NCBI GenBank assembly: GCA_977030845.1
Contig: OZ365118.1
Span: forward strand, 3,286,001 to 3,350,000
Direction of reading: 5' to 3'
Length of the DNA: 64,000 nucleotides
Source of the DNA: Fimbriosthenelais zetlandica
Lineage: Eukaryota
The notes beneath the pieces were generated by a model, which was given only the letters and a program-made list of their open reading frames with translations, was not told the origin of the DNA and searched no databases. Positions 37,431 to 64,000 of this stretch are shown one piece after another (the first letter of the stretch is position 1; the number at the start of each line of letters is the position of its first letter). Made by a program: the position numbers and the translations under genes.

Positions 37431-38478
37431 TGGAGAGTGAGAAAAAAAGGCATGCGGCGGGAGGATATTGGTTAATGTAGTGTAGGCCCGGTTGTTAGTG
37501 GACGTTATAACATAACGTATGGAGACGTTATGCGCCTAGGAATTACCTACACCTTCACACAGATTATTTGGCTATTTTTTATTGCTGTCATTGTACAGTG
37601 GTGGGCGATTATTCAGCATGCCGCGAGGCGGTGATAAGGCATTACAAGGCGCAGCTTCAGTACAGTTAAGCCTCCCGGGAATACTTATTACATTATTCCC
37701 TCCATTGGAATGACAATGATGAATGAGATGCTGCATTGGCAGCGAAAAAAAACACAAGAAAAACCCTTTTTATGTCTGTTTTTATAAGGCCTGTGGAAAT
37801 CCTGGAAAATATGTTTTCGCACTCACACTCCCCCCTCCCCCTCCTGCTTTCTCCTTCCATATCATTCTCCATTTGGTTGTCTGTGTACGTGTTGATTATA
37901 ATCAAGAGTATCCATGAACTAGTTCTAACTAGTATTAACTATCTTGACTATATCTATTTTACCCTAGTGTGGGTGGGGAGTAAGCTGTATTATGAACACC
38001 GATAATTTTGAATGAATTGGCATTCGCTAAACTTTGGTACTAGTAAATTTCAACCTTGGGTGTTCCACTTCGAGTGCTATAGATGGCCCATGCCCGTCCT
38101 CCCCCGCGCTCTCTCATGGTTACGTAACAAACCTCGCACCTTTCCGGTTGAGTGATTTCAGAGGTGCGGGTGGGTGACCTATGGGTATCGGTCCAACCCG
38201 CGGGGGCGGGGGGGGGGCACACCTGAATGCACCTACATGCACTAGCTATAATTAGGTCAGTGCTTCAGTCACCCCCTCCATTAGTCGGTCAACAGGCACC
38301 CGCCCGGGTCAAAATACTATAGGATTACGGAGATTTAGTGGAGAAATGGAATATATTTTTGTGATTTACGCTTCATGGACAAATGAAATGTAATTGTGCT
38401 CACTGGACTGATGGATTATATTTCTGTGATTTGTGTTCTGTGGACAGATGGATTATATTTCTGCGATTTGCGTTTCAG

Positions 38479-38529
38479 GGCATCATAACCAAAGCCAAAC
38501 GCATGCACATTCCGCTTGTCATCGATGCG
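38479..38529 (+). CDS. NAXD: NAXD/CARKD (ATP-dependent NAD(P)HX dehydratase) internal exon, 51 nt, phase 0/0
   Basis: Acceptor TTTGCGTTTCAG, donor GTAAGT. Encodes GIITKAKRMHIPLVIDA, matching vertebrate NAXD GILEVSKARDIPVVIDA (recalled) in length and in the P-x-V-I-D-A motif. Confidence 0.92.
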
Positions 38530-38890
38530 GTAAGTAATGACGCAATACACATTTACCTTTACCTCATAAAAGCCATTACATGTATTAGTATTGAAAACTC
38601 AGCTTGTGAATTGTACATTTTAGTGAAGGTAGATATGAAGTATGAGCTAGGATATAAGATAGGATGTATGTATAATGTGGTAGTCTTGGAGTGTTTTCTG
38701 TTATATAATTTATGGAAGCCAATATGGCTGACCGTAAGTAATGACACAATACACATTACCTCAAACTTTATGTTTGAAATTTCGAAGCCATGATTTGTAT
38801 TGGAGAACTCAGCTTGTGAATTCTACATTTTAGTGAAGGTAGATAGGAAGTGTGAACTAGGATATTATAATTATAATGTGGTAGTCTTAG
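38530..38890 (+). repeat. Diverged 204-bp tandem duplication at the 5' end of the NAXD intron, including the splice donor
   Basis: GTAAGTAATGAC(G/A)CAATACACATT at 38530 and 38734. AACTCAGCTTGTGAATT(G/C)TACATTTTAGTGAAGGTAGATA at about 38596 and 38806. Confidence 0.85.
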
Positions 38891-39564
38891 TCGGGGCTTG
38901 TACTCTTATAATTATAATTGACTTTAGCTAATATCACTGACCGTGACGGGGGGAAGGCTGACATATTGAGATGATTTCAACTGTCACTGTCACTTCATGT
39001 CAGTTCATGGCGCCTTCATTCAACCTTCTATGATACCAGGCAAGATCAAGAGATCGGAACCCTGAGAGAAATAATTGTGATTCAACCAGAAATTGACTTG
39101 AATAATTTTACATGTTGTTTAGATCAGGCTCTCAAAACTTCCTTCTAATGTTGTTTGATTCAGGATGAAATGTGACATTTCTGTCTGTAATTCTAACAGT
39201 TTGAAGCTTGGTTCTCTGACAGTGTCTCAGTTCACGAACTGTAATGTAATGTAGATTTGTATGGAATTATCTTTCAATATTTTACAATTTGTTATGTGAT
39301 TTATCTCCTGCGCACATTCCACTGCGCACCTCTGACTGCGTTCCCTATTTCTCTCCCTCTCCACTCCCTCTCTTCCCTCCCCCATCTCTCTCCCTTCCCT
39401 TTCCTTTCTCTCTCCCTTCCCCTTCCCCTTCTCTCTCCCTTCCCCTTTCCTTCATCCCTCCTTCCTTTCTCTCCCCAATCCTCTCCTTTCCTTTATCTGT
39501 TTGACTTTAATATCCATGTTTCATTTTAATATCATGTGTTATAAATATTATTTTTCGCCTCCAG

Positions 39565-39669
39565 GACGGCCTTCATCTTGTCACTGAGAAGCCGGACCTC
39601 ATCAAAGGTTATAAACGCGCCACCCTCACCCCTAACGCCATGGAGTTCACCCGCCTCTACCAAGCGCTG
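39565..39669 (+). CDS. NAXD: NAXD/CARKD internal exon, 105 nt, phase 0/0
   Basis: Acceptor TTTTTCGCCTCCAG, donor GTCAGT. Encodes DGLHLVTEKPDLIKGYKRATLTPNAMEFTRLYQAL (35 aa), matching NAXD [35 protein letters not shown] (recalled). Splicing to the previous exon rebuilds the VIDA-DGL and LTPNxxEF motifs of the YjeF-C/ribokinase-like family. Confidence 0.95.
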
Positions 39670-42600
39670 GTCAGTTTATCATTTATCATTTATCTTTATC
39701 TCTTCACATGATTGTCACTGCCATATGTGTCTGCCGCAAAATGATTTTACCATTCAGACACTACTGGTTTGATTTCAAATATAAATACAACCATCTGGAC
39801 CTGTCCTGTTCAGTTCTAACGCCCATGCAGATGTAGATAGGTCCTCAAAGCGAGTATTGATACCATTCTAATGTTTACCATTTTTAATGTGTGATACTGG
39901 ATCACATATATATCTCAATCTCTCTCCTTTCTTCCCGCTTCCCATATCTGTTCCCCTGTCTAGCTTACTATTCCCTGTCCATATATAGGTACAGGGATCA
40001 AGCAGACCAAATGAGATGTCACCTCCAAATGGCACCATACATTAGCTAGTCAGAATATGGCTCATTTTTACCCTGTCTGACTTGAACTAATCGTCCCAGC
40101 TCCCCACCCCTCCCTCCCATCCCCCTCCCATCCCCCTCCCATCCCCCTCCGCCCAGTATCAGCCACAATAACCATCTCACCATATCTCACACAACACAAA
40201 AATAAAAGTCAAACACGACGAGCGGCAAATGTGAATGGGACTCCGACAAAATGGCCAGCGTCAGGCGATGCCGGTAACTGTACACCTTTTGTCTGCTCGT
40301 ATTTTTAATCAGTTCAACATTGCCATCTGACAGGCCATGAAATAACGTATGATTCTTTGTCTGTGAACGATGGGAATAATAAGTGAATAACTGATACGGT
40401 CATAGGGGCTGTTTTACATGCTACCTGCATTCAGTTATGTGAAAGGTGTCAAGGATAGATTGTAAAACGTTAGAGATCTTTCACCTAGCATTGAGTAACA
40501 GATGTTGGTGGCAGATAACTGACGTATCTGTGTTATAGCTTCCAGTTAAAACCTGCCCTGAAATATTAGATATTTACAGATAACCAACATCAACTCTGAT
40601 ATAAATTAGCAATAAATCATATTGAGAAGAATGGTTCAGTTTGGAATTCAACTCAATTTATGATCAAAATAAGGGAGATCTACCTGAAAACCATATAAGT
40701 GTTGATCTAGTTTTCAGTGATAATTTCCCTTTTACAGCCTGACAATGACATATATGGTCCATTCAGTATAGAGCTGTAGACTTTAAATAGATGGCGGGGG
40801 GAGGAAGGAGGGCACTCGGCGAGGGTTGTGACTTTGACGACCCAGCGCCCCTCTCATTTCAAGGTTAAATTGGTGGTAGCTTCAAGCTGCGGGCTGTGTG
40901 TATACAAGAGGGTGTGAGGCCAAGACCTGCTAACTTTCACCTCACCCTACTTCACCCTCCCCCCTTTTATAACAATATTCTCTCTCTTCCATCGGAGCCC
41001 GAGGGCACATTGCATTTCCATTCAAATTCACAATTAAGATGGAAAGATTGTAAAATAAGTTGGCAAAATTTTCACCAACAAACCCTCACTTTCAGGGACT
41101 TCATATCTGGTAACATAACATTTGATATCTTAGCCTAAGAAGGGGTGGGGGTAGAGAGGAAGTGGGTGGAGAAAGGGGGTTAAGGGGGGGGAGTGTCATG
41201 TCACCACACCTGTTGTCATGGCAATAGCTTAATGACCCACGCCTACCAACCTGTCACCCCCCCCCCAGATAACACACCTACAGCCTTTATCTCTCTACAA
41301 CCCCTATCTCCATCCATGTCCACACTTACAACCTGGCTTCCATTTTAGATTGATTTCAAATCATTCCTCCTACATTTTCTCCCCATTCATCAACTTTTAT
41401 CCATCTTTATCGATGTTTTTTCTCCCCAATTCACCAAGTTTTATCCATCTTTATCGATGTTTTTGTAAGGGTGTGAAGGGAGTGGTGAAGCATTACATTG
41501 CCGGATGTTGTGTAAGATTGAGAGTAGGCATTGTAACAGTTAATATGGAAGCTGGTATGGTGGAGGCAGAGGTGAGTGAGGGCAGGTCTGGTTGTCCACA
41601 ACAAATCATGTAATCACACACAATTGTAACTGTTGAATTATAGACTCAGGCAGAGACAGCCATAAATCATTTTACCCATATTTATCCCGGAGAAAGGGAG
41701 AAAGGATTTTAGAATAGAGTGAGGGGGAGAGACTAGAGGAGTGATGAAAGGGAGGGAAATAAGTGAAAGAGAGATAGAGAAAGGGAAAAGATGGAGAGCA
41801 AGGGAGAGGATTGAGGAAATTAAATAACTTAAATAGTAGAAAGGAGAGATTTAGAAGAAGGAATGGGAGAGGAGTGTAGGTAGCAGTAGATATAGAGGCA
41901 GGTTTCATTTAGCCATCGTTCAGACAGACGGCGTTGATTAAGTACATGGTATTCATCCATCATTGTAGACACCCAGCCCTCCTGTCAACGCGGTGTATGT
42001 ATATTACAAATGAACAGTAGGCAGAGTACATGTATAATAAATAGCTGCATAATTCATCATACCTTCCAATCTAAATTGATGGAAATTTAGTCAGCAGATA
42101 TACGGAGAAATGAATCTTGTCTTCTCGTCTGCGTTCGAAAACATTTCTCGTTAAAATGGGTTAATGATACCCTTAGTTATATTTGTGGAATTTTTATACT
42201 TTTTTGTCAAAAAATATTGAATTCATAATGAACAAGATAATGGTCCACAGGATGAGATAATGGTGAGATGTAAAGCCTGACTACTGCTCCACATGACCCC
42301 CAGCAAAAAACTTAATGACGTAACATTAGCTGGTACTATTCACATTGAAACTTATCACTAAGTATATCAATGGATGCCAAATAATCTTACTTTTGTACTA
42401 AGATTCTGAGCACACAGGAGAGTGAAGATTGACTGGGGAATTATACCTGGCCATCTCTGTAAAGAGAAAGGAATTCATTAGACTAAAAATAGTTTATTTT
42501 CTTGGAGATAGTGGAGTTATATCAATATATTTATCAGTAGAATACGTTGAGTGAATTGACTATGATTAAAGCTTCAATGTTTGTAGGAAAGTCATGAGGC

Positions 42601-49825: not shown

Positions 49826-51299
49826 CCACAGATAAAGGCGTCACAGATAAAGGGATTAACATAGCGCTATACCTCAATACGCCAGGTGTCATAAACGGCA
49901 CGCCTTTCACCTGAGCCCAGCCTCAGGTAGTTACCATTGCTCTAATATAGCAAACTCCCACCCACATCTCCTCACTTTCTGCGCCTGTTTATTTGTCTAT
50001 CTCTCCTCTGGGATCCAAGAGTACAGTTGTGAGATCGCCGAGTCAAGATCTTCAATACGATTCCTGTTTGTCTTTGAAGGAGGAGGGATTTGGTGAAGGG
50101 TCTGAACTGCCACAAGAGTTTGATCAAATGAAAGACCTTCTCTGTCCACTCACAATGTTTCTCTGTTTCCACGGAGTTTATGTGTCAGAAAAAAATCTAA
50201 TAGGGGCAATGTTTATATTAGACATGTCAATAGTGACTTTCTCCAGTCTCCTTACTCTAATATTTTTGTGATATTTTATTTTAATTTCGAACCTTTAAAA
50301 CAGGGATTTTAGGACAAATGTCGTTGGCCTTTTAGGTGGAGTAAATTAGCATGGGTTGAGGCGTGAGTGATAGATATAGAAGGTAATTAGTGAGTATTTA
50401 TGATCGTCTTTCTGGTGAGAGCAGGTAATCAATACAACATAGGGTCACCACTATATATATCACCCACATGCTCCGGCCCCCCCCCCTCCATCTAGTGCCG
50501 GAGTCCCTTATTGAGATGTTTTGGGTAAGAATCCACCCATGCGGAACATAAAAATAATGCTACAGTGTCGCCCGCCCGCCCAAAAATGACCTTGTGATAT
50601 TACATTCTTCATGACACTTCTGATTGGTTGATATATTTGCAGGAACCAGTCAGAGACGTCCAATTGAAGTCCAGTGATTCCCTGACCAATTCTTGAGCCA
50701 ATTCTAGTCAAGGTAAGGTCGTTCCATTTATTCAAGTTTTGAGGTGGAATTTGTTATACAATGTACTTATGAATTTTGAAGTTGTGTACCGTGTGAAATC
50801 TAATTGAAATCACATATATTTGGGACTCAAGTGTATCTAAGATTTTGATATCGCAATATATTGATCTTAGAGTTATCCCAGCTGAGCTCCGGCTGGGATC
50901 AGCGAGAGATTGTTTTATCATTCACAAATTGTAGGGATCTACTGTAGTTTAGGCCATTTTATATATTCAATCGAGTCATCGACTCTTTAGTGTGTCCTGT
51001 CAGATCTATTATACATTCTTAAATCCTATTAAATGTTTGAGTACACAGACACGTTCATTATTGATCATTTATATCACAACTTCTACCTCAAGACTTTATA
51101 TATGAAACATGTCCACATGATAAGTTTGACGGCCATGTTGTCGACGTCCAGCTATAGGGCTTTAGGTTCATAATTTTGACATGCGTTTCGATTCTTTATA
51201 CAGTAAATAATGTAACCTTTTTTGCCATAATATAATGGACAAATTTGGCATCTATAAAATCTTAGCAATATAGTACATGTACTTAGCATTCTAAATTTC

Positions 51300-51630
51300 C
51301 CTCTCTGCCTTTCTACCTTTCTCTAGCTCTCTCTAGCCGTCTTTCTACCTTTCTCTACCTTCGAATCGTCTACTTTATCTATCTACCATTCTAGGTTTCT
51401 CTACTATTCTCTCAACCTTTCCCCTCTAACTTTTTCTCTAGCTCTCTCTCTCTCCCTCTACCTTTCTCTACATTTCCCACTCTACCTTTCTCTCCACATT
51501 TATCTAACTTTCTCTTCTTACCTTTCTCTTTCGTCGTATCTATCTACCTACCTCGCTAGCTCTCTCTCTACTTTTCTCACTCTCTACCCCTCTCTCTCAA
51601 CCTCTCAACCTTTTACTCTCTACCTTTTAC
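51300..51630. repeat. CT-rich low-complexity tract
   Basis: Recurring CCTTTCTCTA and CTCTCTAC motifs. Confidence 0.8.
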
Positions 51631-51662
51631 AGATTTACAGTATATTTTACTTATTTTAACAG

Positions 51663-51820
51663 ATGGAAACTTCCACTTCTGGGTGGAAGCCGTGGAATTG
51701 GGCGAATGAAACGAAGAAAAGAAGCAGGGAGAAGGTCACGACGAGGACCTCACCACAAAAGCTGGCAGACCAACAGCAACAGGCCCGTCAGCGAAAGGAA
51801 AGATACCAAGCCTTGAGATC
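51663..51820 (+). other. Candidate spliced exon of an unidentified transcript (not NAXD)
   Basis: Strong acceptor CTTATTTTAACAG and donor GTAAGT. 158 nt, purine-rich against an AT/CT-rich background. One fully open frame: METSTSGWKPWNWANETKKRSREKVTTRTSPQKLADQQQQARQRKERYQALR. No family recognised. Confidence 0.45.
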
Positions 51821-52088
51821 GTAAGTAATAAACGTTTCAAACATTCGTGTGTAGGATAAAAGTAAGTCCAGCAAAGGGTGGACCTCAATATTCTTAATAA
51901 GTTTTCAGTGTTTGATGAAAAGTACTTCTCCAAGGACATATAAGGTGAAGTGTTTTTTTCTTTTTTCCTGCGATTAATATATATTTTTTTAAATGCATGT
52001 CTAAATATATTTAAGTTAGGTTTCCTTGCGCACTACAGCTATATAAATAGAATTAAACTAAAGGAACTCACAATAATTTACACCATAG

Positions 52089-52556
52089 CTTCCCTTATTG
52101 TTATTCATCATCAGTTTTTATTAGTCTCAGTTTCTGTGAATGGTAACCTCCCCTGGACAGGAATTACTTTCAAGAAAAATTGGGAATTGTTTTTCTGGGT
52201 GGGTGTCCTGATACAAATACGAGCATTTGACCGAAAAGGACACCATGTATGCGGTCGTTTTTCCCCCACGCGTGATTGATAATTCATAGAAAATATAGTG
52301 TATTATTGAACTTTAATATAGATGTCTTTCAAAAGGAATCTCCAGTACAAGGGAACCATAAACTTAATGTACAGTAACTGTTAAGAATGGGCAAGAATTT
52401 TAGTGTGCTAGCCTAAACAGATCTATATCCCAACCTTTAGGGCCGGGGCAAATCTGTGTATAACTCTATTTATTTATTTGTTCGTTCGTTCGTTCATTCA
52501 TTCATTCATGTATTTATTTATTTGCTGACTTGCTCATTTGCTTATTCATTTGCTTG
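52089..52556 (+). repeat. Interspersed element copy 1 (about 460 bp), direct repeat of 53911-54362
   Basis: The two copies share ...AATTACTTTCAAGAAAAATTG...CTGGGTGGGTGTCCTGATACAAAT...CCATGTATGCGGTCGTTTT...CCACGCGTGATTGATAATTCATAGAAAATATAGTGTATTATTGA... and end in an ATTT/GTTC/ATTC tetranucleotide tail. Confidence 0.85.
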
Positions 52557-52585
52557 TTTACTTGCCTACTTTCTTAATCTTTCAG

Positions 52586-52713
52586 AATGACTCGGCAAGA
52601 TAGGACCGTCACAGGCAGACCTCCCATAGTCATGTGATCCCGCAGGTCAAGCAGCCATTGTTTCTCGCCCCCTCTCCTCTCTGGACCTCGGGTGTAGGAG
52701 GATGTGTGCTCAG
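52586..52713 (+). other. Candidate second exon of the unidentified transcript
   Basis: Acceptor TTCTTAATCTTTCAG, donor CAG|GTAGGT, 128 nt. Joined in frame to 51663-51820 it reads ...S-MTRQDRTVTGRPPIVM-stop. Confidence 0.35.
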
Positions 52714-52915
52714 GTAGGTGTTTTTTTTAATTTTCTCATTCACAGCAGTGGAATCTGGGTGAGATATATTTCTGGTTCTTTGAAATTACATGTGTGCACC
52801 TATTGTCTTTGAATAATCAATCACGCGTGGGAACGCATACATGGCGTACTTCTCGGTCAAAATGAAAACTGACCCAAAGGACGCCATGTATGCGGTCGTT
52901 TAGAATGTTAAATGG

Positions 52916-53920
52916 TAAGTTTCCCTTATTGTTATTCATTTCTTATCAGTTTTTATTAGCCTCAGTAGCTGTGAATAGTAAGTGTCCCTTATTGTTATTA
53001 ATTATAAGTTTTATTAGCCTCAGTAGCTGTGAATAGTAAGTGTCCCTTATTGTTATTAATTATAAGTTTTATTAGCCTCAGTAGCTGTGAATAGTAAGTG
53101 TCCCCTATTTTTATTAATTATAAGTTTTATTAGCCTCAGTAGCTGTGAATAGTAAGTGTCCCCTATTTTTATTAATTATAAGTTTTATTAGCCTCAGTAG
53201 CTGTGAATAGTAAGTGTCCCCTATTGTTATTAATTATAAGTTTTATTAGCCTCAGTAGCTGTGAATAGTAAGTGTCCCTTATTGTTATTAATTATAAGTT
53301 TTATTAGCCTCAGTAGCTGTGAATAGTAAGTGTCCCTTATTGTTATTAATTATAAGTTTTATTAGCCTCAGTAGCTGTGAATAGTAAGTGTCCCTTATTG
53401 TTATTAATTATAAGTTTTATTAGCCTCAGTAGCTGTGAATAGTAAGTGTCCCTTATTGTTATTAATTATAAGTTTTATTAGCCTCAGTAGCTGTGAATAG
53501 TAAGTGTCCCTTATTGTTATTAATTATAAGTTTTATTAGCCTCAGTAGCTGTGAATAGTAAGTGTCCCTTATTGTTATTAATTATAAGTTTTATTAGCCC
53601 CAGTTGCTGTGAATAGTAAGTGTCCCTTATTGTTATTAATTATAAGTTTTATTAGCCCCAGTTGCTGTGAATAGTAAGTGTCTCTTATTGTTATTAATTA
53701 TAAGTTTTATTAGCCCCAGTAGCTGTGAATAGTAAGTGTCCCCTATTGTTATTAATTATAAGTTTTATTAGCCCCAGTTGCTGTGAATAGTAAGTGTCCC
53801 TTATTGTTATTAATTATAAGTTTTATTAGCCTCAGTAGCTGTGAATAGTAAGTGTCCCCTATTGTTATTAATTATAAGTTTTATTAGCCTCAGTAGCTGT
53901 GAATAGTAAGCTTCCCTTAT
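52916..53920. repeat. 58-bp AT-rich satellite, about 17 copies
   Basis: Unit AGTAGCTGTGAATAGTAAGTGTCCCTTATTGTTATTAATTATAAGTTTTATTAGCCTC. AGTAGCT register runs from 52964 to 53892 (16 x 58 bp). Confidence 0.98.
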
Positions 53921-54362
53921 TCATTTTTTATCAGTTTCTATTAAACTCTGTAGCTCCCCTGGACGAATTACTTTCAAGAAAAATTGTGGGAATTGTTTTT
54001 CTGGGTGGGTGTCCTGATACAAATGCGAGCATTTGGCCGAAAAGGACGCCATGTATGCGGTCGTTTTTCCCCCACGCGTGATTGATAATTCATAGAAAAT
54101 ATAGTGTATTATTGATGTCAAGCCTTTCAAAAGGAATCTGAAATACAAGGGAACTTGTAATGTACTTGTAACTTGTAACTTTAATGTACAGTTAAGAATG
54201 GGCAAGATTTTTGGTATGCTAAATAGATGTAAAACCCAACCTTTCTTAACTATAACTTTAAAGCAAATCTGTGTATAACGATATTTATTTATTTATTTAT
54301 TTGTTTTTTTTGCTGACTTGCTAATTTGCTTGCTCATTTGCTCATTCATTTGCTTATTCATT
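53911..54362 (+). repeat. Interspersed element copy 2, direct repeat of 52089-52556
   Basis: See copy 1. It begins exactly where the 58-bp array ends. Confidence 0.85.
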
Positions 54363-54377
54363 TTTTGAAAATGTCCT

Positions 54378-54425
54378 TCCCCGTGTGGTGAAGGTTGCTG
54401 GTTCGAAACACGGCCAGGTCAAATA
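54378..54425 (+). mobile_element. Partial tRNA-derived (SINE-like) fragment with a B box
   Basis: GGTTCGAAAC (54400-54409) in the context GGTGAAGGTTGCTGGTTCGAAACACGGCCAGGTC. No A box seen. Confidence 0.35.
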
Positions 54426-55017
54426 AAAACCACACTCAGGTCAAACCTTATAGGTCTTTGGTCAAACGTTGCAATAAGAGAACACTACAAGGGCTGGTCG
54501 GCCTGGTGTAGGGATATTGGTGACATAGCTAATGTGACATGTGCCTGTGATATGAGGCATCACTATGATCATTGAGGCACCCTGGCTCACTGTCACAAGT
54601 AGGCGCCGTCATGATATCAGTATCATCTGGCTCACTGTCACCGTCATGAATGATATCATTAACTGAAAAAGTGTTGAAAGTGAAATTAAACAACCATTCA
54701 ATCAATACGATAAAATCACCCTTGAAAACCAATTGCCTTTCTTTATACCCACTTAAACACATCCTTTCTCTCCAATTCTACTAAGGAAATAAGTTGTTAC
54801 TTACGTCCATAGTTCAACGGACACAGCCGATATTACCGTCCATTATTTAGAAATGCAACAATGAGCATCTTGTCTCAATGAGCATCTTGTCTCAATGAGC
54901 CTCAGTCTGTCACCTTAATTAACACTGACATACATCATGTATACGTCTATATCATTATAAATTACTTCTGCATTTTAAAATATATTGACATATGCATACT
55001 TTATGTCGTTTTTCTAG

Positions 55018-55127
55018 GAAATTAGAGCAGCAGTGACGGAGGAAGAGTCCAGAACAGCCATGCATTCATCATGTACATCGCGTCACATGGCGTGGACAAA
55101 CTTCATCAATGCGTGCCAGACACTTAA
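55018..55127 (+). pseudogene. Possible frameshifted caspase-like (p20, His motif) exon remnant
   Basis: Acceptor GTCGTTTTTCTAG, then EIRAAVTEE; a shifted frame gives QNSHAFIMYIASHGVD, resembling the caspase hydrophobic-strand-SHG motif. The similarity is short and needs a frameshift. Confidence 0.3.
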
Positions 55128-55479
55128 GTTAAGTCAAATGTTCTCTCCCCTCCCTACATTGTAGAGTACAAGACATGAGTAAACCTACAATTAACGTCAT
55201 ACAGATCAGATGATTTAATGTCATACGCCAAATGATTGTAGAAATGAACTGTTGTATGAGCATTCATTCCCAATATGACTTAGCTCAATTTCAGATTGTT
55301 AGTCTGTATAGACGCTATTATAGTCCGGGCTCAAGATCCCTCAAAGAGCTCTAAACATGATTTTATCCTACCCCACTTGCTCCGTACAATTTCTTTTTTC
55401 GATAGCTAAATCCGAGTTTTGTAGAAACCCTTTCTTAAAAAAAAAACAGACAAATTTTATAATTTTCGAAAAATTCTAC

Positions 55480-56216
55480 ATCCGATATGGGCATGTCATT
55501 CCTCATATGGAAGTACCCCCAGAGGGCGTTCTAAATATTTAAAAAGTCACCCTGATTAACTGGTTACCATGGCAACATGAAAACTGTAATTTTGTCGATT
55601 TTTCAGCAAAGATTTTCAGTTTCCATAGCAACTGCAGTAATTGGTATTTCAGAATTTTTACATTTAATATTCAAGGTATGTCAACTACCTATCTCATGCT
55701 TATATAATTAAAGACAATTGTATTGAATAGTTTTCATGGTGATAAGGGCGAAATGCAACATTCACATCCTCCTCTCTGCTCCCTTCCTCTCTCTGGTCAG
55801 GTCAGGTATAGAAATACCTTGCGCTGCTATGGCTTGCTTGCGCTGCTATGGCTCGCTTGCGCTGCTCTGATCTGTATGCATTAAGCCATGCTTTGCATGC
55901 ATTTCCTAGCCTTGCCCGCGCTCCTTAGCCCCGCCTGCGCTCCTTAGCCCCGCTCCTTTACATATACTCACACTCTGTTTATCTGTTATGTGAATGTTCC
56001 TTTTTGCCCTTATCATCATGGAAACTAACCGATACAATTATCTTTAATTATACATGCATGACATAGGTGGTTGACGTACCTTGAATATTGAATGTAAAAA
56101 TTGCTGAAATACCAATTACTGCAGTTGCTCTGGAAACTGAAAATAAATCTGCTGAAAAATCGACAAAATGACATAGTTTTCAGATGGCCATGGTAACCAG
56201 GTAATCAGGGTGACTT
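55480..56216. mobile_element. Foldback-type non-autonomous element, copy A
   Basis: Imperfect inverted arms 55544-55767 and 55988-56216 (AAGTCACCCTGATTAACTGGTTACCATGGC ... GCCATGGTAACCAGGTAATCAGGGTGACTT). The loop of about 220 bp holds short 19-bp tandem repeats. Homologous to 56882-57060 and to 62991-63673. Confidence 0.75.
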
Positions 56217-56370
56217 ATATTTTCAACAAGGTCGATTTCTATGGTTGGCACCCAGAAAAGTGGTCTTAATATGCACTAAACGGGTGGCCTTGTTACATAG
56301 AGGATATATAGAGGAAAAGATTCAGGGAAAAAGTAGTATTATAAACCTGGTGGTCTAGTTGGAGGGACCT

Positions 56371-56481
56371 GTAACATTGTAGAGCCATAACATTGTAGAG
56401 CCATAACATTGTAGAGCTGTAACATTGTAGAGCTGTAACATTGTAGAGCCTTAACATGTAGAGCCATACGTGTGTAGAGCC
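56371..56481. repeat. 16-bp minisatellite, about 7 copies
   Basis: Unit TAACATTGTAGAGC(CA/TG). The same AACATTGTAGAGCC motif recurs near 56857 and, inverted, near 63693. Confidence 0.9.
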
Positions 56482-56553
56482 GAGAAGATAGGCCAATTTT
56501 AGACACCTTAATTAGGCTACGCCAATAATTACTTGTTTATACTTTCCTTACAG

Positions 56554-56730
56554 CTACATCTTAAAATCGCAAGGAACATCTGTGCTGCGTATGCCGCATG
56601 CCTGCTGACAAGAGACTGCAACCACCGAGCATTTCAACAACACCAACGTTCAATGACCACTATCGAAATGATCCATTTCATTTCTAAAAGCTTTCAAAGG
56701 AACTTTGAAATAATTAATTATGGACAATAG
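56554..56730 (+). pseudogene. NAXD: NAXD C-terminal exon copy (+ strand), probably frameshifted
   Basis: Acceptor CTTTCCTTACAG. Encodes ...NICAAYAACLLTRDCNHRAFQQHQRSMTTIEMIHFISKSFQRNFEIINYGQ-stop, matching the NAXD C-terminus [44 protein letters not shown] (recalled). Lacks 4 nt (TCCA) that are present in the minus-strand copy. Confidence 0.8.
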
Positions 56731-56881
56731 ATAGTAATTAGAGGCTCGTAATATTGTGATCTACCGGCGAAATGAAGTGTTACAGAAACAGGAAGCGGAA
56801 TTAAAGCAGACGACATATAGCTGATGGTGGTGCCAGAGGAAGTGAAGTTTCTAGAAACATTGTAGAGCCGTGATATTGTAG

Positions 56882-57060
56882 ATCCATATGGGCATGTCAT
56901 TCCTCATATGGAAGTACTCCCAGAGGGCGTTCTAAATACAAAAAAGTCACCCTGATTAACTGGTTACCATGGCAACCTGAAAACTCTGTACCAACTGTAC
57001 CAAAAAAATACTAATTACTGCAGTTGCTATGGAAACGGAAAATATATCTGCTCAAAAATT
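56882..57060. mobile_element. Foldback element copy B, internally deleted
   Basis: Direct repeat of 55480 onward (ATCCATATGGGCATGTCATTCCTCATATGGAAGTAC...CACCCTGATTAACTGGTTACCATGGCAAC), joined directly to right-arm sequence (TAATTACTGCAGTTGCTATGGAAAC). Confidence 0.75.
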
Positions 57061-57199
57061 GAGTAAAATGTCATTGTAAAATATCATAGAATGCACAATT
57101 GGTGTACAATGTTCAATTATTGTATAATACACAATTAGTGTACAATGTGTCTAGGAAATTAGAGCAGCAGCAGAATGACACGTTAACATAATTGCCTGC

Positions 57200-58315
57200 C
57201 CCCTCTCCTATAATTGAAGTTTGTCCTTAAACTTATTCCCAGCCCTTCCTATAATTGAAGTCTATCCTTGAAATATTTCCCAGCCATTCCTATACTTAGT
57301 CTATCCTTGAAATAATTCCCATCCCTTGCTTTAATTAAAGTTTGTCAAACTTGTTTCCATCCCTTCCTTTAATTAAATTTGTCCTTCAACTTATTCCCAG
57401 CCCTTCCTATAATTGAAGTCTATCCTTGAAATATTTCCCAGCCATTCCTATACTTAGTCTATCCTTGAAATAATTCCCATCCCTTGCTTTAATTAAAGTT
57501 TGTCAAACTTATTTCCATCCCTTCTTTTAATTAAATTTGTCCTTCAACTTATTCCCAGCCCTTCCTATAATTAAAGTCTATCCTTGAAATATTTCCCAGC
57601 CATTCCTATACTTAGTCTATCCTTGAAATAATTCCCAGCCCTTGCTTTAAAGTTTGTCAAACTTATTTCCATCCCTTCCTTTAATTAAATTTGTCCTTCA
57701 ACTTATTCCCAGCCCTTCCTATAATTGAAGTCTATCCTTGAAATATTTCCCAGCCATTCCTATACTTAGTCTATCCTTGAAATAATTCCCATCCCTTGCT
57801 TTAATTAAAGTTTGTCAAACTTATTTCCATCCCTTCCTTTAATTAAATTTGTCCTTCAACTTATTCCCAGCCCTTCCTATAATTAAAGTCTATCCTTGAA
57901 ATATTTCCCAGCCATTCCTATACTTAGTCAAACTTATTTCCATCCCTTCCTTTAATTAAATTTGTCCTTCAACTTATTCCCAGCCCTTCCTATAATTAAA
58001 GTCTATCCTTGAAATAATTCCCATCCCTTGCTTTAATTAAAGTTTGTCAAACTTATTTCCATCCCTTCCTTTAATTAAATTTGTCCTTCAACTTATTCCC
58101 AGCCCTTCCTATAATTAAAGTCTATCCTTGAAATATTTCCCAGCCATTCCTATACTTAGTCTATCCTTGAAATAATTCCCATCCCTTGCTTTAATTAAAC
58201 TTTGTCAAACTTATTTCCATCCCTTCCTTTAATTAAATTTGTCCTTCAACTTATTCCCAGCCCTTCCTATAATTAAAGTTTATCCTTGAAATAATTCCCA
58301 GCCCTTCATTTAATC
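57200..58315. repeat. 158-bp higher-order satellite built from four related subunits of about 38-42 bp, about 7 copies
   Basis: The TTATTCCCAGCCCTTCCTATAATT register recurs at 57233, 57391, 57549, 57703, 57861, 57974, 58093 and 58251. The short periods (113 and 119 bp) correspond to loss of one subunit. Confidence 0.92.
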
Positions 58316-58883
58316 AAAGCCCAGTCCATCTATCAGATTAGTGATTAGAAAATGTGTCTGATATAGTAAGATGGATATTATTGTGGTTTTGAATCATGTA
58401 CTTTCTTATGGAAACAAGACAGGTTACAAGTTCTTAAAATGAATTAATCAAAATGTTCTTAAAATAGGCAGCAAAACAGGTACATGTACTTACTTTTAAT
58501 GATTTCTTCTGAGGAAAAATCTTAGTTGATTGTGATTATGTTATGAGCATTGAAATATTGTGTTCATAGGATTCATGGAATAACTTCATAGAACTAATGA
58601 AGGTGCTCATTAGTACTGATTCCTCAGTTCTTAGGTTCAGTGCTTTCAATATTGCTATATCAATCTTAATTTAATGTTCTTTGCCTTTCCACACTGCCTT
58701 GTGAATTTCCTAATAGTTTTATTAACGAGAGGATTTATTTGAGATAATGTAATATTCTAAAACGGTGAATATGACTGCTGAACCCAAAGTATTAATAAAA
58801 AGAACATTCTGACATAAAAGTGACGTTTTCAATATGTGTCATACCAAACCCCTCCTACCTTATCGTGCTGTGGCGTTCCACCA

Positions 58884-59841
58884 CTTCAAACAGCTCAGAC
58901 AACTCAAACAATTCTGAGACAAGGTCTGAGACCTTGTATTTTACTTTTCTTATTTTTTAGATTTTATTTTTTAATAAGTCGGCTTCAAACAGCTCAGACC
59001 ACTCAGACCACTCAGACAACTCAGACAACTCAGACCACTCAGACAACTCAGACCAAGGTCTGAGACCTTGTATTTTACTTTTCTTATTTTTTAGATTTTA
59101 TTTTTTAATAAGTCGGCTTCAAACAGCTCAGACAACTCAGACCACTCAGACCACTCAGACAACTCAGACCAAGGTCTGAGACCTTGTATTTTACTTTTCT
59201 TATTTTTTAGATTTTATTTTTTAATAAGTCGGCTTCAAACAGCTCAGACAACTCAGACCACTCAGACAACTCAGACAACTCAGACCAAGGTCTGAGACCT
59301 TGTATTTTACTTTTCTTATTTTTTAGATTTTATTTTTTAATAAGTCGGCTTCAAACAGCTCAGACCACTCAGACCACTCAGACAACTCAGACAACTCCGA
59401 CCACTCAGACAACTCAGACCAAGGTCTGAGACCTTGTATTTTACTTTTCTTATTTTTTAGATTTTATTTTTTAATAAGTCGGCTTCAAACAGCTCAGACA
59501 ACTCAGACCACTCAGACAACTCAGACAACTCAGACCAAGGTCTGAGACCTTGTATTTTACTTTTCTTATTTTTTAGATTTTATTTTTTAATAAGTCGGCT
59601 TCAAACAGCTCAGACAACTCAGACCACTCAGACAACTCAGACAACTCAGACCACTCAGACAACTCAGACCAAGGTCTGAGACCTTGTATTTTACTTTTCT
59701 TATTTTTTAGATTTTATTTTTTAATAAGTCGGCTTCAAACAGCTCAGACAACTCAGACCACTCAGACAACTCAGACCACTCAGACAACTCAGACCACTCA
59801 GACAACTCAAACAGCTCAGACAACTCAGACAGCTCAGACCA
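58884..59841. repeat. Composite tandem array: seven 73-bp constant blocks separated by variable runs of a 9-bp repeat
   Basis: Constant block CAAGGTCTGAGACCTTGTATTTTAC...AAGTCGGCTTCAAACAG at 58920, 59054, 59170, 59286, 59420, 59536 and 59670. Spacers are made of CTCAGACAA and CTCAGACCA units. Confidence 0.97.
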
Positions 59842-59898
59842 GGTCACTTGGCCAGTCTCAAGATAAAGCCCCCATTTCCCACTCTGTATATCAGCCAT

Positions 59899-59967
59899 GT
59901 TCATAGCTCAGTGGTAACGTGCCTGCTTCTGGCACGAGAGTAGAGGGTTCGAACCCTGGTAAAACGA
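59899..59967 (+). mobile_element. tRNA-derived SINE head or tRNA pseudogene
   Basis: A box TAGCTCAGTGG (59904-59914), stem GTGCC-7nt-GGCAC, and T arm AGGG-TTCGAA-CCCT with B box GGTTCGAACCC (59946-59956). The acceptor stem does not pair and the anticodon loop is non-canonical, so it is not a functional tRNA. Confidence 0.65.
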
Positions 59968-61024
59968 GGTCTGGGCCAACTTCTGGAGCGTTCACTACAT
60001 CAAAATATTTTATTATATATATATTATTTCACATCTGATTGTCGGACGGGGTTTTGCTTCACGTCTGGGGTACAACAGATGGGGTTGATTATTTTCATTG
60101 TTTAAATAAACAAGATTCGCCATAATATTATACATTATTTACTTCATGACACAAAAATAAACATGATTACAAGTCTTCTTAGTATACAAAAAGCATAGAG
60201 TACTGGGCCATGTTATCATTGTATGAAATGAAAAACATTACTCCGATAAAGCCCTCGTGTTTTGACATTTATGCAATGGAACAACACTAAGGATAGTCTG
60301 TATATATAACACTATACAACATACAAAATCTAACCTCCATTAATCAACTTTGAGCACTGGTTCTGATGTGCCAAAAAGGAAGCGATCATTAATGTTCATG
60401 TGCCATCATATCATCTCAAACTTTTCCATCGTCATCGTCAGCAAATGCCCTAGTGTTGTACAGAAAAACAAACTGTAGAAGGCAAATTCTCAAATCTTTA
60501 AAAGTCTGCTTGTCTCCTAATCACAGAGTCACCAGAATAATTAGTCAGAATTGTGTGCTTCAAGAGAATCAAACATGAAAATAAATTAATCTCCCATTGT
60601 ATAAATGGCAGTTACTAACGGTAAAATACTGGAAGGCACATCAAAGTGAGAAGAGGCCGAATGCGACATGTGTCAATAGGACCTATTTCAGCTTCCTCCA
60701 CGTGGCATTAAACACATAGAAAGAGCAAGTCTGAGTGGCTCATTTGAAGGGAGCAGTTGACAAAAGATGACAGGCGGCTGCATGAAAGTACGAGCTCCCC
60801 TTCCCACACCGGGCCCGCTGGGTCACAGGCGTCTCTCATGCCCTCTCTTCAAATTATTTGACAAGTTTGCATGATGAGAAATCTGTGAATCGATCGGCAC
60901 CGGGGAAGTATTTGATATGAATTCTCGCATGTCAGAATGAATCTGTATTTGATGTAAATCTGTATTTTAGAGGAAGCAGCTGACAGTTGTGTGGTGCGGG
61001 GCGGTTTTACAGGAAACATGAGCC

Positions 61025-61080
61025 AGGCTGAGGGCACAGGCTGAGGGCACAGGCTGAGGGCACAGGCTGAGGGCACAGGC
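61025..61080. repeat. 13-bp tandem repeat, 4.3 copies
   Basis: AGGCTGAGGGCAC x4. Confidence 0.95.
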
Positions 61081-61147
61081 GAGGACAAGCTCCCAACAAT
61101 GACCCAACAACGACTACAACCAAGGTATACCATGTAGCCTACCATAT

Positions 61148-62670
61148 TGGGGTATAAATTAATAATACACAGTAGAACCTGACAAATAAGACAACCGATC
61201 ATGACAGTAGCAACAATTGATCAAATAATTTACACTGACAAGTGTTCTCTGATCCACTGTACAAGTTGGTAAATGGTTAAGTAAGTTTGAGGTCTAATAA
61301 TATATAGTAGAACCTCACAAATAAGATAACCGATCATGAGTAGCAACAATTGATCAAATAATTTACACTGACAAGTGGTCTCTGATCCACTGTACAAGTT
61401 GGTAAATGGTTAAGTAAGTTTGAGGTATAATAATATATAGTAGAACCTGACAAATAAGATAACCGATCATGACAGTAGCAACAATTGATCAAACAAATAA
61501 TTTACACTGACAATTGGTCTCTGATCCACTGTACAAGTTGGTAAAGGGTTTAAGTAAGTTTGGGGTATAATAATATACAGTAGAACCTCACAAATAAGAT
61601 ACCGATCATGACAGTAGCAACAATTGATCAAACAAATAATTTACACTGACAATTGGTCTCTGATCCACTGTACAAGTTGGTAAATGGTTAAGTAAGTTTG
61701 AGGTATAATAATATATAGTAGAACCTCACAAATAAGATAACCGATCATGACAGTAGCAACAATTGATCAAACAAATAATTTACACTGACAATTGGTCTCT
61801 GATCCACTGTACAAGTTGGTAAATGCTTAAGTAAGTTTGAGGTATAATAATATATAGTAGAACCTCACAAATAAGATAACCGATCATGACAGTAGCAACA
61901 ATTGATCAAACAAATAATTTACACTGACAATTGGTCTCTGATCCACTGTACAAGTTGGTAAAGGGTTTAAGTAAGTTTGGGGTATAATAATATACAGTAG
62001 AACCTCACAAATAAGATACCGATCATGACAGTAGCAACAATTGATCAAACAAATAATTTACACTGACAATTGGTCTCTGATCCACTGTACAAGTTGGTAA
62101 AGGGTTTAAGTAAGTTTGGGGTATAATAATATACAGTAGAACCTCACAAATAAGATACCGATCATGACAGTAGCAACAATTGATCAAACAAATAATTTAC
62201 ACTGACAATTGGTCTCTGATCCACTGTACAAGTTGGTAAAGGGTTTAAGTAAGTTTGGGGTATAATAATATACAGTAGAACCTCACAAATAAGATACCGA
62301 TCATGACAGTAGCAACAATTGATCAAACAAATAATTTACACTGACAATTGGTCTCTGATCCACTGTACAAGTTGGTAAAGGGTTTAAGTAAGTTTGGGGT
62401 ATAATAATATACAGTAGAACCTCACAAATAAGATACCGATTATGACAGTAGCAACAATTGATCAAACAAATAATTTACACTGACAATTGGTCTCTGATCC
62501 ACTGTACAAGTTGGTAAAGGGTTTAAGTAAGTTTGAGGTATAATAATATATAGTAGAACCTCACAAATAAGATAACCGATCATGACAGTAGCAACAATTG
62601 ATCAAATAATTTACACTGACAAGTGGTCTCTGATCCACTGTACAAGTTGGTAAAGGGTTTAAGTAAGTTG
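61148..62670. repeat. Satellite of about 139 bp, 11 copies
   Basis: AGTAGAACC register at 61171, 61306, 61439, 61579, 61717, 61856, 61996, 62135, 62274, 62413 and 62552. Unit contains ...GATCATGACAGTAGCAACAATTGATCAAACAAATAATTTACACTGACAATTGGTCTCTGATCCACTGTACAAGTTGG... Confidence 0.97.
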
Positions 62671-62990
62671 GAGAGTTTTATCAGTGATAGGTAACAGAGT
62701 TCCTTGCCTGTCTTATAGTGTGGCTTCACTAGGAGCACTGAATGGCTTCCATCATTAGCTCACCTAGAGTAGATGATGAGCAGCTCGTGGAGCATCATAC
62801 ACACCATACACGGCTGGCGGATTACACCTGAGGCTATAAAGCCGGGGGTCCACCGCCCAGCTCACATTAATCTTAATCTTCATCATATCAAAAGATGATT
62901 ATCACTTTGGCGGGGTGGCTGTGTATTAAGAGAACATATATCGAGGATAGTGGTTGCTTACTGGGCACGGCTCAGCATTCTCACACTGAC

Positions 62991-63673
62991 TGAAAACTAT
63001 GTAATTTTGTCGATTTTTCAGTAGATTTATTTTCAGTTTCCAGAACAACTGCAGTAATTAGTATTTCAGCAATTTTTACATTCAATATTCAAAGAACGTC
63101 AACCACCTATGTCATGCATATATAATTAAAGACAATTGTATCGGTTAGTTTCCATGGTGATAAGGGCAAAAAGGAACATTCACATAACAGATAAACAGAG
63201 TGTGAGTATATGTAAAGGAGCGGGGCTAAGGAGCGCGGGCGGGGCTAAGGAGCGCGGGCAAGGCTAGGAAATGCATGCAAAGCATGGCTTAATGCATACA
63301 GATCAGAGCAGCGCAAGCGGGCCATAGCAGCGCAAGCGGGCCATAGCAGCGCAAGGTATTGACCTGACCAGAAAGAGGAAGGGTGCAGAGAGGAGGATGT
63401 GGATGTTGCATTTCGCCCTTATCACCATGGAAACTATCCAATACAATTGTCTTAAATTACATATGCATGACCTAGGTGGTTGACGTACCTTGAATATTGA
63501 ATTAAAAATTGCTGAAATACCAAATGCTGCAGTTGCTATGGAAGCTGAAAACATGTCTTTGCTGAAAAATCGACAAAAATTACAGAGTTTTCAGGTTGCC
63601 AAGATAACCAGTTAATCAGGATAATTTCGAACGCCCTCTGGGAATATATGAGGAATGACATGCCCATATGGAT
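62991..63673 (-). mobile_element. Foldback element copy C, inverted relative to copy A
   Basis: Its reverse complement aligns with 55480 to about 56182 (arm, loop with GCGCTGCTATGGC and GCGCTCCTTAGCCCCGC repeats, second arm), with scattered substitutions and indels. Truncated on its left side. Confidence 0.8.
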
Positions 63674-63825
63674 CTACAAATACAATATAACGGCTCTACA
63701 ATGTTTCTAGAAACTTCACTTCGAGGTTGTCCTCTGGCACCACCGTCAGCTATGTGTCGTCAGCTTTATTTCCACTTCCTGTTTCTGTAACACTTCACTT
63801 CGCCGGTAGATCACAATATTATTGT

Positions 63826-64000
63826 CTATTGTCCATAATTAATGATTTCAAAGTTCGCTTGAAAGCTTTTCGAAATGAAATGGATCATTTCGATAGTGGT
63901 CATTGAACGTTGGTGTTGTTGAAATGCTCGGTGGTTGCAGTCTCTTGTCAGCAGGCATGCGGCATACGCAGCACAGATGTTGGATCCTTGCGATTTTAAG
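63826..64000 (-). CDS. NAXD: NAXD C-terminal exon copy (- strand); frame intact as far as visible, truncated by the window edge
   Basis: Reverse complement reads c-LKSQGSNICAAYAACLLTRDCNHRAFQQHQRSMTTIEMIHFISKSFQANFEIINYGQ-TAG. By alignment to the + copy the acceptor should lie about 6 nt beyond position 64000. Functional status unknown. Confidence 0.7.
   Translation of the reverse strand, partial: LKSQGSNICAAYAACLLTRDCNHRAFQQHQRSMTTIEMIHFISKSFQANFEIINYGQ

What the first reader, a model, noticed from the sequence alone, without database searches (positions are those of the whole stretch)
55480..64000. NAXD terminal exon carried twice, in opposite orientation, by a foldback element (candidate exon-capturing composite transposon)
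Seen: the last coding exon of NAXD, with its acceptor, sits between two directly repeated copies of a foldback element (A 55480-56216, B 56882-57060). A second copy of exon, linker and foldback lies inverted at 62991-64000. The exon copies differ by 4 substitutions plus a 4-nt indel in about 175 nt, while the flanks carry more indels. Established: gene-fragment capture is known for Pack-MULE/CACTA elements and Helitrons; Drosophila FB elements mobilise DNA lying between two copies; composite-like eukaryotic transposons with long terminal direct repeats exist (KolobokP). Inference: this is an animal non-autonomous element that has captured and is spreading a NAXD exon, with copies landing within or next to the parental gene. 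A plain inverted segmental duplication of the NAXD 3' end is the main alternative.
Basis: partly seen in the sequence, partly recalled or inferred. Interest (0 to 1): 0.75.

Follow-up and report, generated by a model that had tools for sequence, protein, structure and literature searches.

The report
NAXD last exon amplified on one chromosome
The last exon of the NAXD repair-enzyme gene, together with a hairpin-forming repeat beside it, has been copied about 16 more times along one chromosome of this worm-like animal as decaying pseudo-exons; this is a real but not unprecedented case of gene-fragment amplification.

Summary
Foldback A (55480-56216) is a strong hairpin. B (56882-57074) is an internally deleted copy of it. 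An exon + flank + foldback module recurs inverted at 62990-64016.

The two exon copies are not equivalent. The minus-strand copy is the true last exon of the genome's only NAXD gene, which runs about 37 kb beyond the window. The plus-strand copy (56554-56730) is a frameshifted pseudo-exon.

Genome-wide there are 16 further near-complete copies plus fragments, all on contig C37. Each keeps part of the last intron, the acceptor, the coding part, the 3'UTR with its poly(A) signal, and the same junction to the foldback. All dispersed copies share a second junction that the native locus lacks, so they descend from one founder. Their substitutions look neutral.

Homology between copies runs for kilobases beyond both foldbacks, boundaries vary, exon-less units exist, and I found no target-site duplication, fixed terminus or transposase.

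The best reading is a chromosome-restricted mosaic duplication family (duplicon) seeded at the NAXD 3' end, with breakpoints in the foldback. A large non-autonomous transposon remains possible. No sequencing runs were listed, so there is no read-level check.

The scan had noted other foldback repeats in this genome, but not this family.

The parts
38080..39798 (+). Second inverted NAXD fragment. It carries copies of two internal exons (38476-38553 and 39565-39672) with their splice sites. Only two copies exist genome-wide: this one and the native gene.
   Evidence: Both exons are identical to the native ones. Well-aligned intron blocks are about 95-100% identical.
51229..55479 (+). Upstream part of the repeated block ('U'), including a 58-nt satellite at 52911-53921. 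It is shared with other C37 copies, which start at different left boundaries (about 51229, 52600 and 54214).
55480..56216 (+). Foldback A. It has a 64-nt left lead, arms of 225-270 nt and a GC-rich core with short repeats. The lead plus left arm is the monomer of a 357-nt-period tandem repeat on contigs C10, C11 and C34.
56217..56373 (+). Linker L1. It follows the foldback in all class 1 and class 3 units and is absent from the native NAXD intron.
56374..56553 (+). NAXD-derived remnant of the last intron: a 16-nt minisatellite (56372-56481), then a conserved intron stretch and the AG acceptor. This copy lacks 87 nt that most other copies keep.
56554..56730 (+). Pseudo-exon, a copy of the NAXD last exon. 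A 4-nt deletion shifts the native frame, and a stop follows after 17 codons.
56731..56881 (+). Copy of the NAXD 3'UTR and flank. It has the ATTAAA variant of the poly(A) signal at 56800 and ends with 16-nt-motif units next to the foldback.
56882..57074 (+). Foldback B, internally deleted (lead + arm positions 1-42 + right-arm positions 120-187). Its right junction to the TGTAAA... sequence is shared by all dispersed copies and is absent at the native locus.
57075..60573 (+). Downstream part of the repeated block: the 158-nt satellite (57201-58314), the 116-nt satellite (58886-59803), a decayed tRNA-like module with A and B boxes (59904, 59946), and a shared tail.
60574..62989 (.). Spacer between the block and the native foldback, including a 139-nt satellite of 11 units (61160-62673). 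The copy of 60084-63173 at C37:18.66 Mb has only one 139-nt unit.
62990..63673 (-). Foldback at the native NAXD 3' end. Its right arm is cut at about position 196, at a junction specific to this locus; that junction is itself duplicated at 18.66 Mb.
63674..63825 (-). Native NAXD 3'UTR and flank, with AATAAA at 63765-63770, 56 nt after the stop codon.
63826..64000 (-). Native NAXD last exon. It runs to 64006, just outside the window, and is in frame with the penultimate exon at 64289-64406 across a 282-nt intron.

Best explanation
Shown:
- The minus-strand exon is the ordinary last exon of the genome's only NAXD gene, which lies on the minus strand over about 37 kb.
- A foldback repeat, an inverted dimer of a satellite monomer, lies about 150 bp after the stop codon, just past the poly(A) signal.
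- A DNA segment was copied once into a neighbouring non-coding, satellite-rich repeat block. The segment holds the 3' part of the last intron, the acceptor, the last exon, the 3'UTR and most of the foldback.
- That block was then amplified to at least 16 exon-bearing copies, alongside at least 8 exon-less sister units, all on contig C37.
- The copies decay neutrally. The plus-strand copy in the window is one of them, a frameshifted pseudo-exon.

Inferred:
- The founder arose next to the gene by an inverted duplication or template switch provoked by the hairpin-forming foldback.
- Later spread was by recombination- or replication-based intrachromosomal duplication of mosaic blocks with variable ends. 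This is a 'core duplicon' style of spread, not cut-and-paste or rolling-circle transposition.
- The exon is a passenger. Because each copy is a complete terminal-exon cassette, it could occasionally trap transcripts.
For: - Native gene: eight exon blocks are collinear with full-length NAXD proteins on the minus strand. The penultimate exon carries the GGQGDLLSG motif and matches PF01256. No other NAXD exons exist anywhere in the genome except the extra last-exon copies and one 1.7-kb fragment.
- Amplification: 17 near-complete exon+flank matches including the native one, all on C37. All 19 protein-level matches are on C37. Every near-full-length foldback match among the 40 candidates scored is also on C37.
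- DNA-level copying: the copies keep 70-170 nt of intron, the acceptor and the 3'UTR.
- Single founder: all copies share the native 3'UTR|foldback junction. They also share a foldback|TGTAAA junction that the native locus lacks.
- Neutral decay: 14 synonymous against 30 non-synonymous distinct substitutions, spread 14:14:16 over the three codon positions. Six copies are frameshifted and nine are still open.
- Not bounded by the foldbacks: homology extends from about 51.2-54.2 kb to 60.6 kb of the window. Class 1 units carry a different cassette at the same place.
- Variable boundaries. Breakpoints lie inside foldback arms.
- Another block from this same locus, 60084-63173 including the native-specific foldback junction, is copied at 18.66 Mb.
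- No ORF of 120 aa or more lies inside the repeated block itself, the only one in 50-64 kb (117 aa) lying in the spacer; no Rfam match and no tRNA call.
- The tree is star-like. The window's plus copy is identical over 454 nt to the 22.17 Mb copy and is not sister to the native exon.
Against: - The mechanism is inferred from anatomy only.
Full block ends were not seen for most copies, so a large element with eroded or distant termini is not excluded.
- Three units do begin within about 0.6 kb of each other on the left.
- This genome has active Helentron-type elements carrying tRNA-like arrays according to earlier, unchecked scan notes. The right part of the block contains such modules.
- A foldback element carrying a gene and transposing is documented in Drosophila (Ssk-FB4, PMC8277862).
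- No reads were available to confirm the assembly or to look for insertion polymorphism.
Confidence: 0.6

Rival explanations
1. A true mobile element has captured the exon. It would be either a Pack-type foldback or composite element, or a large non-autonomous rolling-circle (Helentron/HINE-like) element carrying satellites, tRNA-like modules and gene fragments. It would spread by transposition with strong local reinsertion.
For: - There are many dispersed copies from a single capture event.
- The exon sits between two direct foldbacks in class 3 units.
- The block is built of internal tandem arrays plus tRNA-like modules, like HINEs (PMC7492417).
- Class 2 units join a fragment related to a contig C29 family to the NAXD fragment in the same orientation, as Helitrons often do.
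- There are precedents in animals: Ssk-FB4 and the Pack-TIRs (PMC8277862).
Against: - Homology passes both foldbacks.
- I saw no target-site duplication at foldback A, at the native foldback or at the cassette.
- Left and right ends are not shared sharply.
- All copies lie on one 23.8-Mb contig that is 5% of the genome.
- The block has no coding capacity.
- The captured piece lies outside the foldback arms, not between them.
Confidence: 0.27
2. Nothing more than a local inverted segmental duplication of the NAXD 3' end: a palindrome with two exon copies.
For: - The two window copies are inverted and 7 kb apart.
- A second inverted NAXD fragment (two internal exons) lies 17 kb further on the same strand, in collinear order and with similar divergence.
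- With about 17 copies on 23.8 Mb, a chance neighbour within 7 kb is unlikely, about 1% by my estimate.
Against: - Sixteen further copies exist elsewhere on C37.
- The plus copy is nearer to the 22.17 and 1.18 Mb copies than to the native exon.
- It carries the derived foldback junction of the dispersed family.
- The DNA between the two inverted NAXD fragments is not NAXD intron.
Confidence: 0.06
3. An assembly artefact: collapsed or misjoined repeats, or haplotigs, create apparent extra copies.
For: - The region is dense in satellites and inverted repeats.
- Several copies come in near-identical pairs, some of them mirror images.
- No reads could be laid.
Against: - The copies differ from each other by 2-12% and by private indels. 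They fall into three structural classes and sit in different flanking DNA.
- The window has no N.
Confidence: 0.04

Closest known systems
Primate core duplicons, e.g. LCR16a/NPIP on human chromosome 16 (PMC3530683, PMC7419210)
   Same: An ancestral module is shared by many interspersed duplication blocks of a single chromosome. The blocks are mosaic, their boundaries vary, they occur in both direct and inverted orientation, and repeats sit at the breakpoints.
   Different: Here the blocks are small (about 5-10 kb seen), non-coding and satellite-rich. The core carries only a terminal exon that decays neutrally, not an expanding gene family. The host is an annelid-like invertebrate. The duplication mechanism is equally unresolved.
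Ssk-FB4 and animal Pack-TIRs (Tan et al. 2021, PMC8277862)
   Same: A foldback element is associated with a host gene fragment that became multicopy. Capture happened in cis close to the parent gene. The authors propose fork switching followed by spread.
   Different: In Ssk-FB4 the gene lies between the inverted arms of one element, copies land on different chromosomes, and they have 9-10-bp target-site duplications. Here the exon lies beside the foldback or between two direct copies, I found no target-site duplication, and all copies stay on one contig.
   Same: Host DNA is flanked by two foldback elements.
   Different: The amplified unit here is not delimited by the two foldbacks.
Helitron/Helentron gene-fragment capture and satellite-carrying HINEs (PMC7492417, PMC4778049)
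   Same: Non-coding elements with internal tandem arrays, no target-site duplication, and mosaics of gene fragments in one orientation.
   Different: No subterminal inverted repeats, 3' palindrome or fixed ends were identified. Helentron families in the literature are spread genome-wide, whereas this family is confined to one contig.

Membership tests
NAXD / Carb_kinase (PF01256), for the native minus-strand gene | Exons collinear with full-length NAD(P)H-hydrate dehydratases, including the GGxGDxLxG region and the C-terminus | tested here: met
   tblastn gives 8 collinear blocks. The reference proteins score 165-172 bits on PF01256, and the penultimate exon alone scores 25.3 bits, E 1.2e-5. 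It is the only such gene in the genome.
Foldback-type Pack element (Ssk-FB4-like Pack-TIR) | Long inverted arms able to form a hairpin | tested here: met
   (z = -41.7)
Foldback-type Pack element (Ssk-FB4-like Pack-TIR) | Captured fragment lies between the two inverted arms of one element | tested here: not met
   The exon lies outside the foldback, 150 bp from its left end. In class 3 units it lies between two direct copies.
Foldback-type Pack element (Ssk-FB4-like Pack-TIR) | Target-site duplications at independent insertion sites, including other chromosomes | tested here: not met
   No duplication flanks foldback A or the native foldback. The flanks are themselves family sequence. All copies are on C37.
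Composite transposon bounded by two foldbacks | Homology between copies ends at the outer ends of the two flanking elements | tested here: not met
   Homology continues at least 1-4 kb to the left and at least 3.5 kb to the right.
Helitron / Helentron (HINE) | Fixed 5' and 3' termini with subterminal inverted repeats and a 3' palindrome; insertion at TT or AT without duplication | tested here: inconclusive
   No shared sharp end was seen on the right or left. Full units could not be fetched, and the sub-structures were not searched for systematically.
Helitron / Helentron (HINE) | Autonomous Rep/helicase partner sharing the termini | not tested
   Earlier scan notes report Helentron parents in this genome. 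I did not compare them.
Segmental duplication family / core duplicon | Blocks of at least 1 kb with high identity, interspersed on one chromosome | tested here: met
   Blocks of about 4-9 kb at 80-100% identity, at more than 25 sites from 0.39 to 23.5 Mb of C37 only.
Segmental duplication family / core duplicon | Mosaic blocks with variable boundaries around a shared core | tested here: met
   There are three structural classes, a cassette swap, a fragment related to C29, and different end points.
Processed retrocopy | Intron loss and a poly(A) tail | tested here: not met
   The copies keep intron sequence and the acceptor, and run past the poly(A) signal into the foldback.

The most novel reading that the evidence does not exclude
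The amplified module is a complete terminal-exon cassette: acceptor, 59-codon reading frame, stop codon and poly(A) signal. It rides on a chromosome-restricted foldback/satellite duplicon and would act as a natural 3' gene trap or exon-shuffling vehicle. In class 2 units it sits about 420 nt downstream of an exon-like piece related to a contig C29 family. In the C29 locus and the copies near 6.33 and 6.62 Mb, though not in the 12.20 Mb copy, that piece has an ATG and a GT donor in the phase that would read into the NAXD frame, which would give new small chimeric genes.
Probability: 0.1. Interest if true: 0.7.

Novelty: new variant of a known kind. Interest (0 to 1): 0.45.

Why it matters
This is a clean invertebrate example of a gene fragment seeded from a single-copy housekeeping gene and amplified about 16-fold on one chromosome only. 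The founder junction, the neutral decay and the foldback-associated breakpoints are all readable from the sequence.

Three things follow if it holds:
- 'Core-duplicon'-style intrachromosomal spread is not confined to primates.
- Hairpin-forming satellite dimers are implicated as breakpoint makers.
- There is a set of dated, complete terminal-exon cassettes with which to test exon trapping.

It also warns annotators: at least nine of the stray NAXD last exons still read open and could be mis-joined into gene models.

Tried and rejected
- Reads: the look-up of sequencing runs listed no run. Read laying was therefore not used, and neither the assembly nor expression could be checked.
I worked from 3-8 kb per site plus coordinate-only searches.
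- tRNA and Rfam scans of 50-64 kb found nothing, although a tRNA-like module with A and B boxes is visible at 59904-59956.
- ORF scan: the only ORF of 117 aa or more, in the spacer at 60849-61202, looks like low-complexity non-coding translation (not searched against any library).
- Target-site duplications: I inspected the flanks of foldback A, foldback B, the native foldback and the cassette junction and saw none.
- Common termini: right-end and left-end alignments showed no sharp shared boundary.
- Parent of the class 1 cassette 'M': it occurs only inside the 8 class 1 units.
- Selection on the copies: rejected.
- Special conservation of the two internal duplicated exons (0 differences): rejected as remarkable once intron blocks proved 95-100% identical where they align.
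- Large segmental duplication for the 12.20/13.27 Mb pair: rejected. Homology stops about 2.6 kb upstream of the exon.
- The spliced model was checked exon by exon only.
Full report
**Observation.** The window is G000:C37:3286001-3350000 and contains no N.

- Foldback A (55480-56216) has arms 55544-55767 and 55988-56216 that are 87-94% complementary. As single-stranded DNA it folds at -220 kcal/mol, against -71 for shuffles (z = -41.7).
- B (56882-57074) is the same element with its middle deleted.
- Between A and B lie a 157-nt linker, a 16-nt minisatellite, a stretch of intron with an AG acceptor, an exon-like ORF (56554-56730) and about 150 nt of flank.
- The module exon + flank + foldback recurs inverted at 62990-64016.
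- The exon copies differ by 4 substitutions in 177 bases and one 4-nt indel.

**The minus-strand copy is the real gene.** I fetched 50 kb beyond the window. On the minus strand, 282 nt upstream of the inverted exon, lies an exon (ext 64289-64406) that encodes the GGQGDLLSG region of NAD(P)H-hydrate dehydratase. It has good splice sites and the right phase to read into the last exon through to a stop codon.

This exon alone retrieved 517 relatives from the protein representatives library. Full-length relatives score 165-172 bits on PF01256. By tblastn they align to eight collinear minus-strand blocks from ext 101033 to 63826. An earlier scan note (s1-183031) places an ATP-grasp gene head-to-head with NAXD just beyond that point, which fits.

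A genome-wide protein search finds no other NAXD gene. AATAAA lies 56 nt after the stop codon, and the foldback starts about 150 nt after the stop codon.

**The plus-strand copy is a pseudo-exon.** In the native splice phase its 4-nt deletion gives a stop after 17 codons. It also lacks 87 nt of intron that most copies keep.

**Genome-wide copies.**
- The exon plus flank (341 nt) has 17 near-complete matches including the native one, plus fragments. All are on contig C37, between 0.39 and 23.48 Mb. Other contigs match only a 52-nt piece of the flank.
- At the protein level all 22 candidates were scored, and all 19 matches are on C37.
- The foldback has at least 36 long matches, all on C37. On C10, C11 and C34 only its lead plus left arm occurs, as a tandem repeat of 357-nt period. 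The foldback therefore looks like an inverted dimer of a satellite monomer.

**What was copied, and how often it was captured.** Alignment of 18 copies shows that each carries one or two 16-nt units, 70-170 nt of the last intron, the acceptor, the exon, the 3'UTR with AATAAA or ATTAAA, and the same junction to the left end of the foldback as in the native locus. None carries the penultimate exon. This is DNA-level copying, not retroposition.

All dispersed copies also share a right-hand junction (foldback right arm cut at position 187, then TGTAAA...) that leads into the 158-nt satellite. The native foldback instead ends at a different, locus-specific junction. One founder event therefore explains all copies.

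The tree is star-like, with later pairwise duplications (0.39/1.92, 12.20/13.27, 3.34/22.17 Mb). The window's plus copy is identical over 454 nt to the 22.17 Mb copy, and it groups with the 1.18 Mb copy rather than with the native exon.

**No selection on the copies.** Nine copies keep the frame and six are frameshifted. Distinct substitutions are 14 synonymous against 30 non-synonymous, and they fall 14:14:16 over the three codon positions. Divergence in the exon is similar to that in the 3'UTR.

**The amplified unit.** Segment maps give three classes:

| Class | Layout | Sites |
|---|---|---|
| 1 | upstream block U, foldback, linker, a 200-nt cassette 'M', a 16-nt foldback relic, 158-nt satellite, downstream block; no NAXD piece | 8 |
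| 3 | the same, but M is replaced by the NAXD piece plus a second foldback in direct orientation | window copy and 6 others |
| 2 | a different upstream segment X, then the NAXD piece, a full foldback and the same downstream block | about 10 |

Homology with other copies runs from about 51.2-54.2 kb to 60.6 kb of the window, far beyond both foldbacks.

Boundaries differ between copies on the left and on the right. I saw no target-site duplication. The block has no ORF of 120 aa or more, no Rfam match and no tRNA call.

X is 87% identical to a five-copy family on contig C29, so the blocks are mosaics of pieces from several sources.

A further block from this same locus, window 60084-63173, is copied at 18.66 Mb. 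It includes the native-specific foldback junction and ends inside the foldback arm. It holds only one unit of the 139-nt satellite, which has 11 units here. Breakpoints thus recur inside foldback arms (right-arm 187, left-arm 42 with right-arm 120, and 63173).

**Local context.** A second inverted NAXD fragment (38080-39798) carries two internal exons with their splice sites. It exists only here and in the gene. Its substitution divergence is low and similar to that of the last-exon copy. The 11 kb between it and the repeat block is not NAXD intron.

With about 17 copies on 23.8 Mb, one landing within 7 kb of the parent by chance is unlikely, roughly 1% by my estimate. The founder therefore probably arose here.

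**Interpretation.** The shown facts fit best a chromosome-restricted mosaic duplication family seeded at the NAXD 3' end. The hairpin-forming foldback would act as a breakpoint or template-switch site, both for the founding inverted copy and for later rearrangements. The exon is a neutral passenger. The mechanism itself is an inference.

A large non-autonomous transposon is the main rival, at about 0.27. It could be a Pack-type foldback element (Ssk-FB4 is a precedent, PMC8277862) or a Helentron/HINE-like element (PMC7492417; earlier notes report such elements with tRNA-like arrays in this genome). I could not see complete units.

A plain inverted duplication is refuted as the whole story. An assembly artefact is unlikely, but it was not tested with reads, because none was listed.

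**Comparison and novelty.** The closest analogues are primate core duplicons (PMC3530683, PMC7419210) and animal Pack-TIRs (PMC8277862). This case differs from core duplicons in scale, content and host. It differs from Pack-TIRs in the position of the cargo, the lack of target-site duplications and the confinement to one contig. I rate it a new variant of a known kind, of moderate interest.

**Limits.**
- Only 3-8 kb per site was available.
- Copy counts are lower bounds, because the search tool scores only the best candidates.
'Annelid-like' comes from earlier notes and was not tested.
- The spliced NAXD model was examined exon by exon only; the joined sequence was not built or searched.

Noticed in passing
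window 38080-39798 (+), against C37:3384471-3385916 (-): A 1.7-kb inverted duplicate of two internal NAXD exons with intact splice sites. The exons are 100% identical to the native ones. It exists only as these two copies in the genome and lies 17 kb upstream of the pseudo last exon on the same strand.
   Followed up: partly
L014:839-1295 (C37:12.20 Mb) and L070:695-1137 (C29:8.61 Mb): Class 2 units carry, about 420 nt upstream of the NAXD exon, a piece 87% identical to a five-copy family on contig C29. It looks like an exon, with an acceptor, an ATG and a GT donor. In the C29 locus and the copies near 6.33 and 6.62 Mb, the donor phase (2 nt) matches the 1-nt start of the NAXD last exon, so a small chimeric reading frame is possible; the 12.20 Mb copy has a stop after the ATG. 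No RNA data were available.
   Followed up: partly
L038:2408-2600 (C37:7.55 Mb) and 7 other class 1 units: At the exact place where class 3 units hold the NAXD piece, class 1 units hold a 200-nt cassette 'M' preceded by a good polypyrimidine/AG acceptor. No separate parent locus was found.
   Followed up: partly
C11:47623169-47624352, C10:42113700-42114887, C34:210074-210360: The 64-nt lead plus left arm of the foldback occurs on other contigs as a head-to-tail tandem repeat of about 357-nt period. The C37 foldback is therefore an inverted dimer of a satellite monomer.
   Followed up: no
window 59900-59967: A decayed tRNA-like module with A box (59904) and B box (59946), not called by ARAGORN. 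It is repeated many times on C37 and a few times on C1, C25 and C27. In other units it is followed by a second, tRNA-Ser-like module. It resembles the tRNA-like cassettes that earlier notes ascribe to Helentron-type elements.
   Followed up: partly
window 61160-62673, against L071 (C37:18.66 Mb): The 139-nt satellite has 11 units here but a single unit in the paralogous block at 18.66 Mb, which indicates local array expansion after duplication.
   Followed up: partly
L014:270-542: A 270-nt element with dozens of 96-98% identical copies on nearly all contigs. It is a young, high-copy SINE- or MITE-like insertion inside a class 2 unit.
   Followed up: no
window 56784-56835: A 52-nt stretch of the NAXD 3' flank matches many sites on other contigs at 85-91%, so part of the 3'UTR-derived flank is itself an old dispersed repeat fragment.
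   Followed up: no
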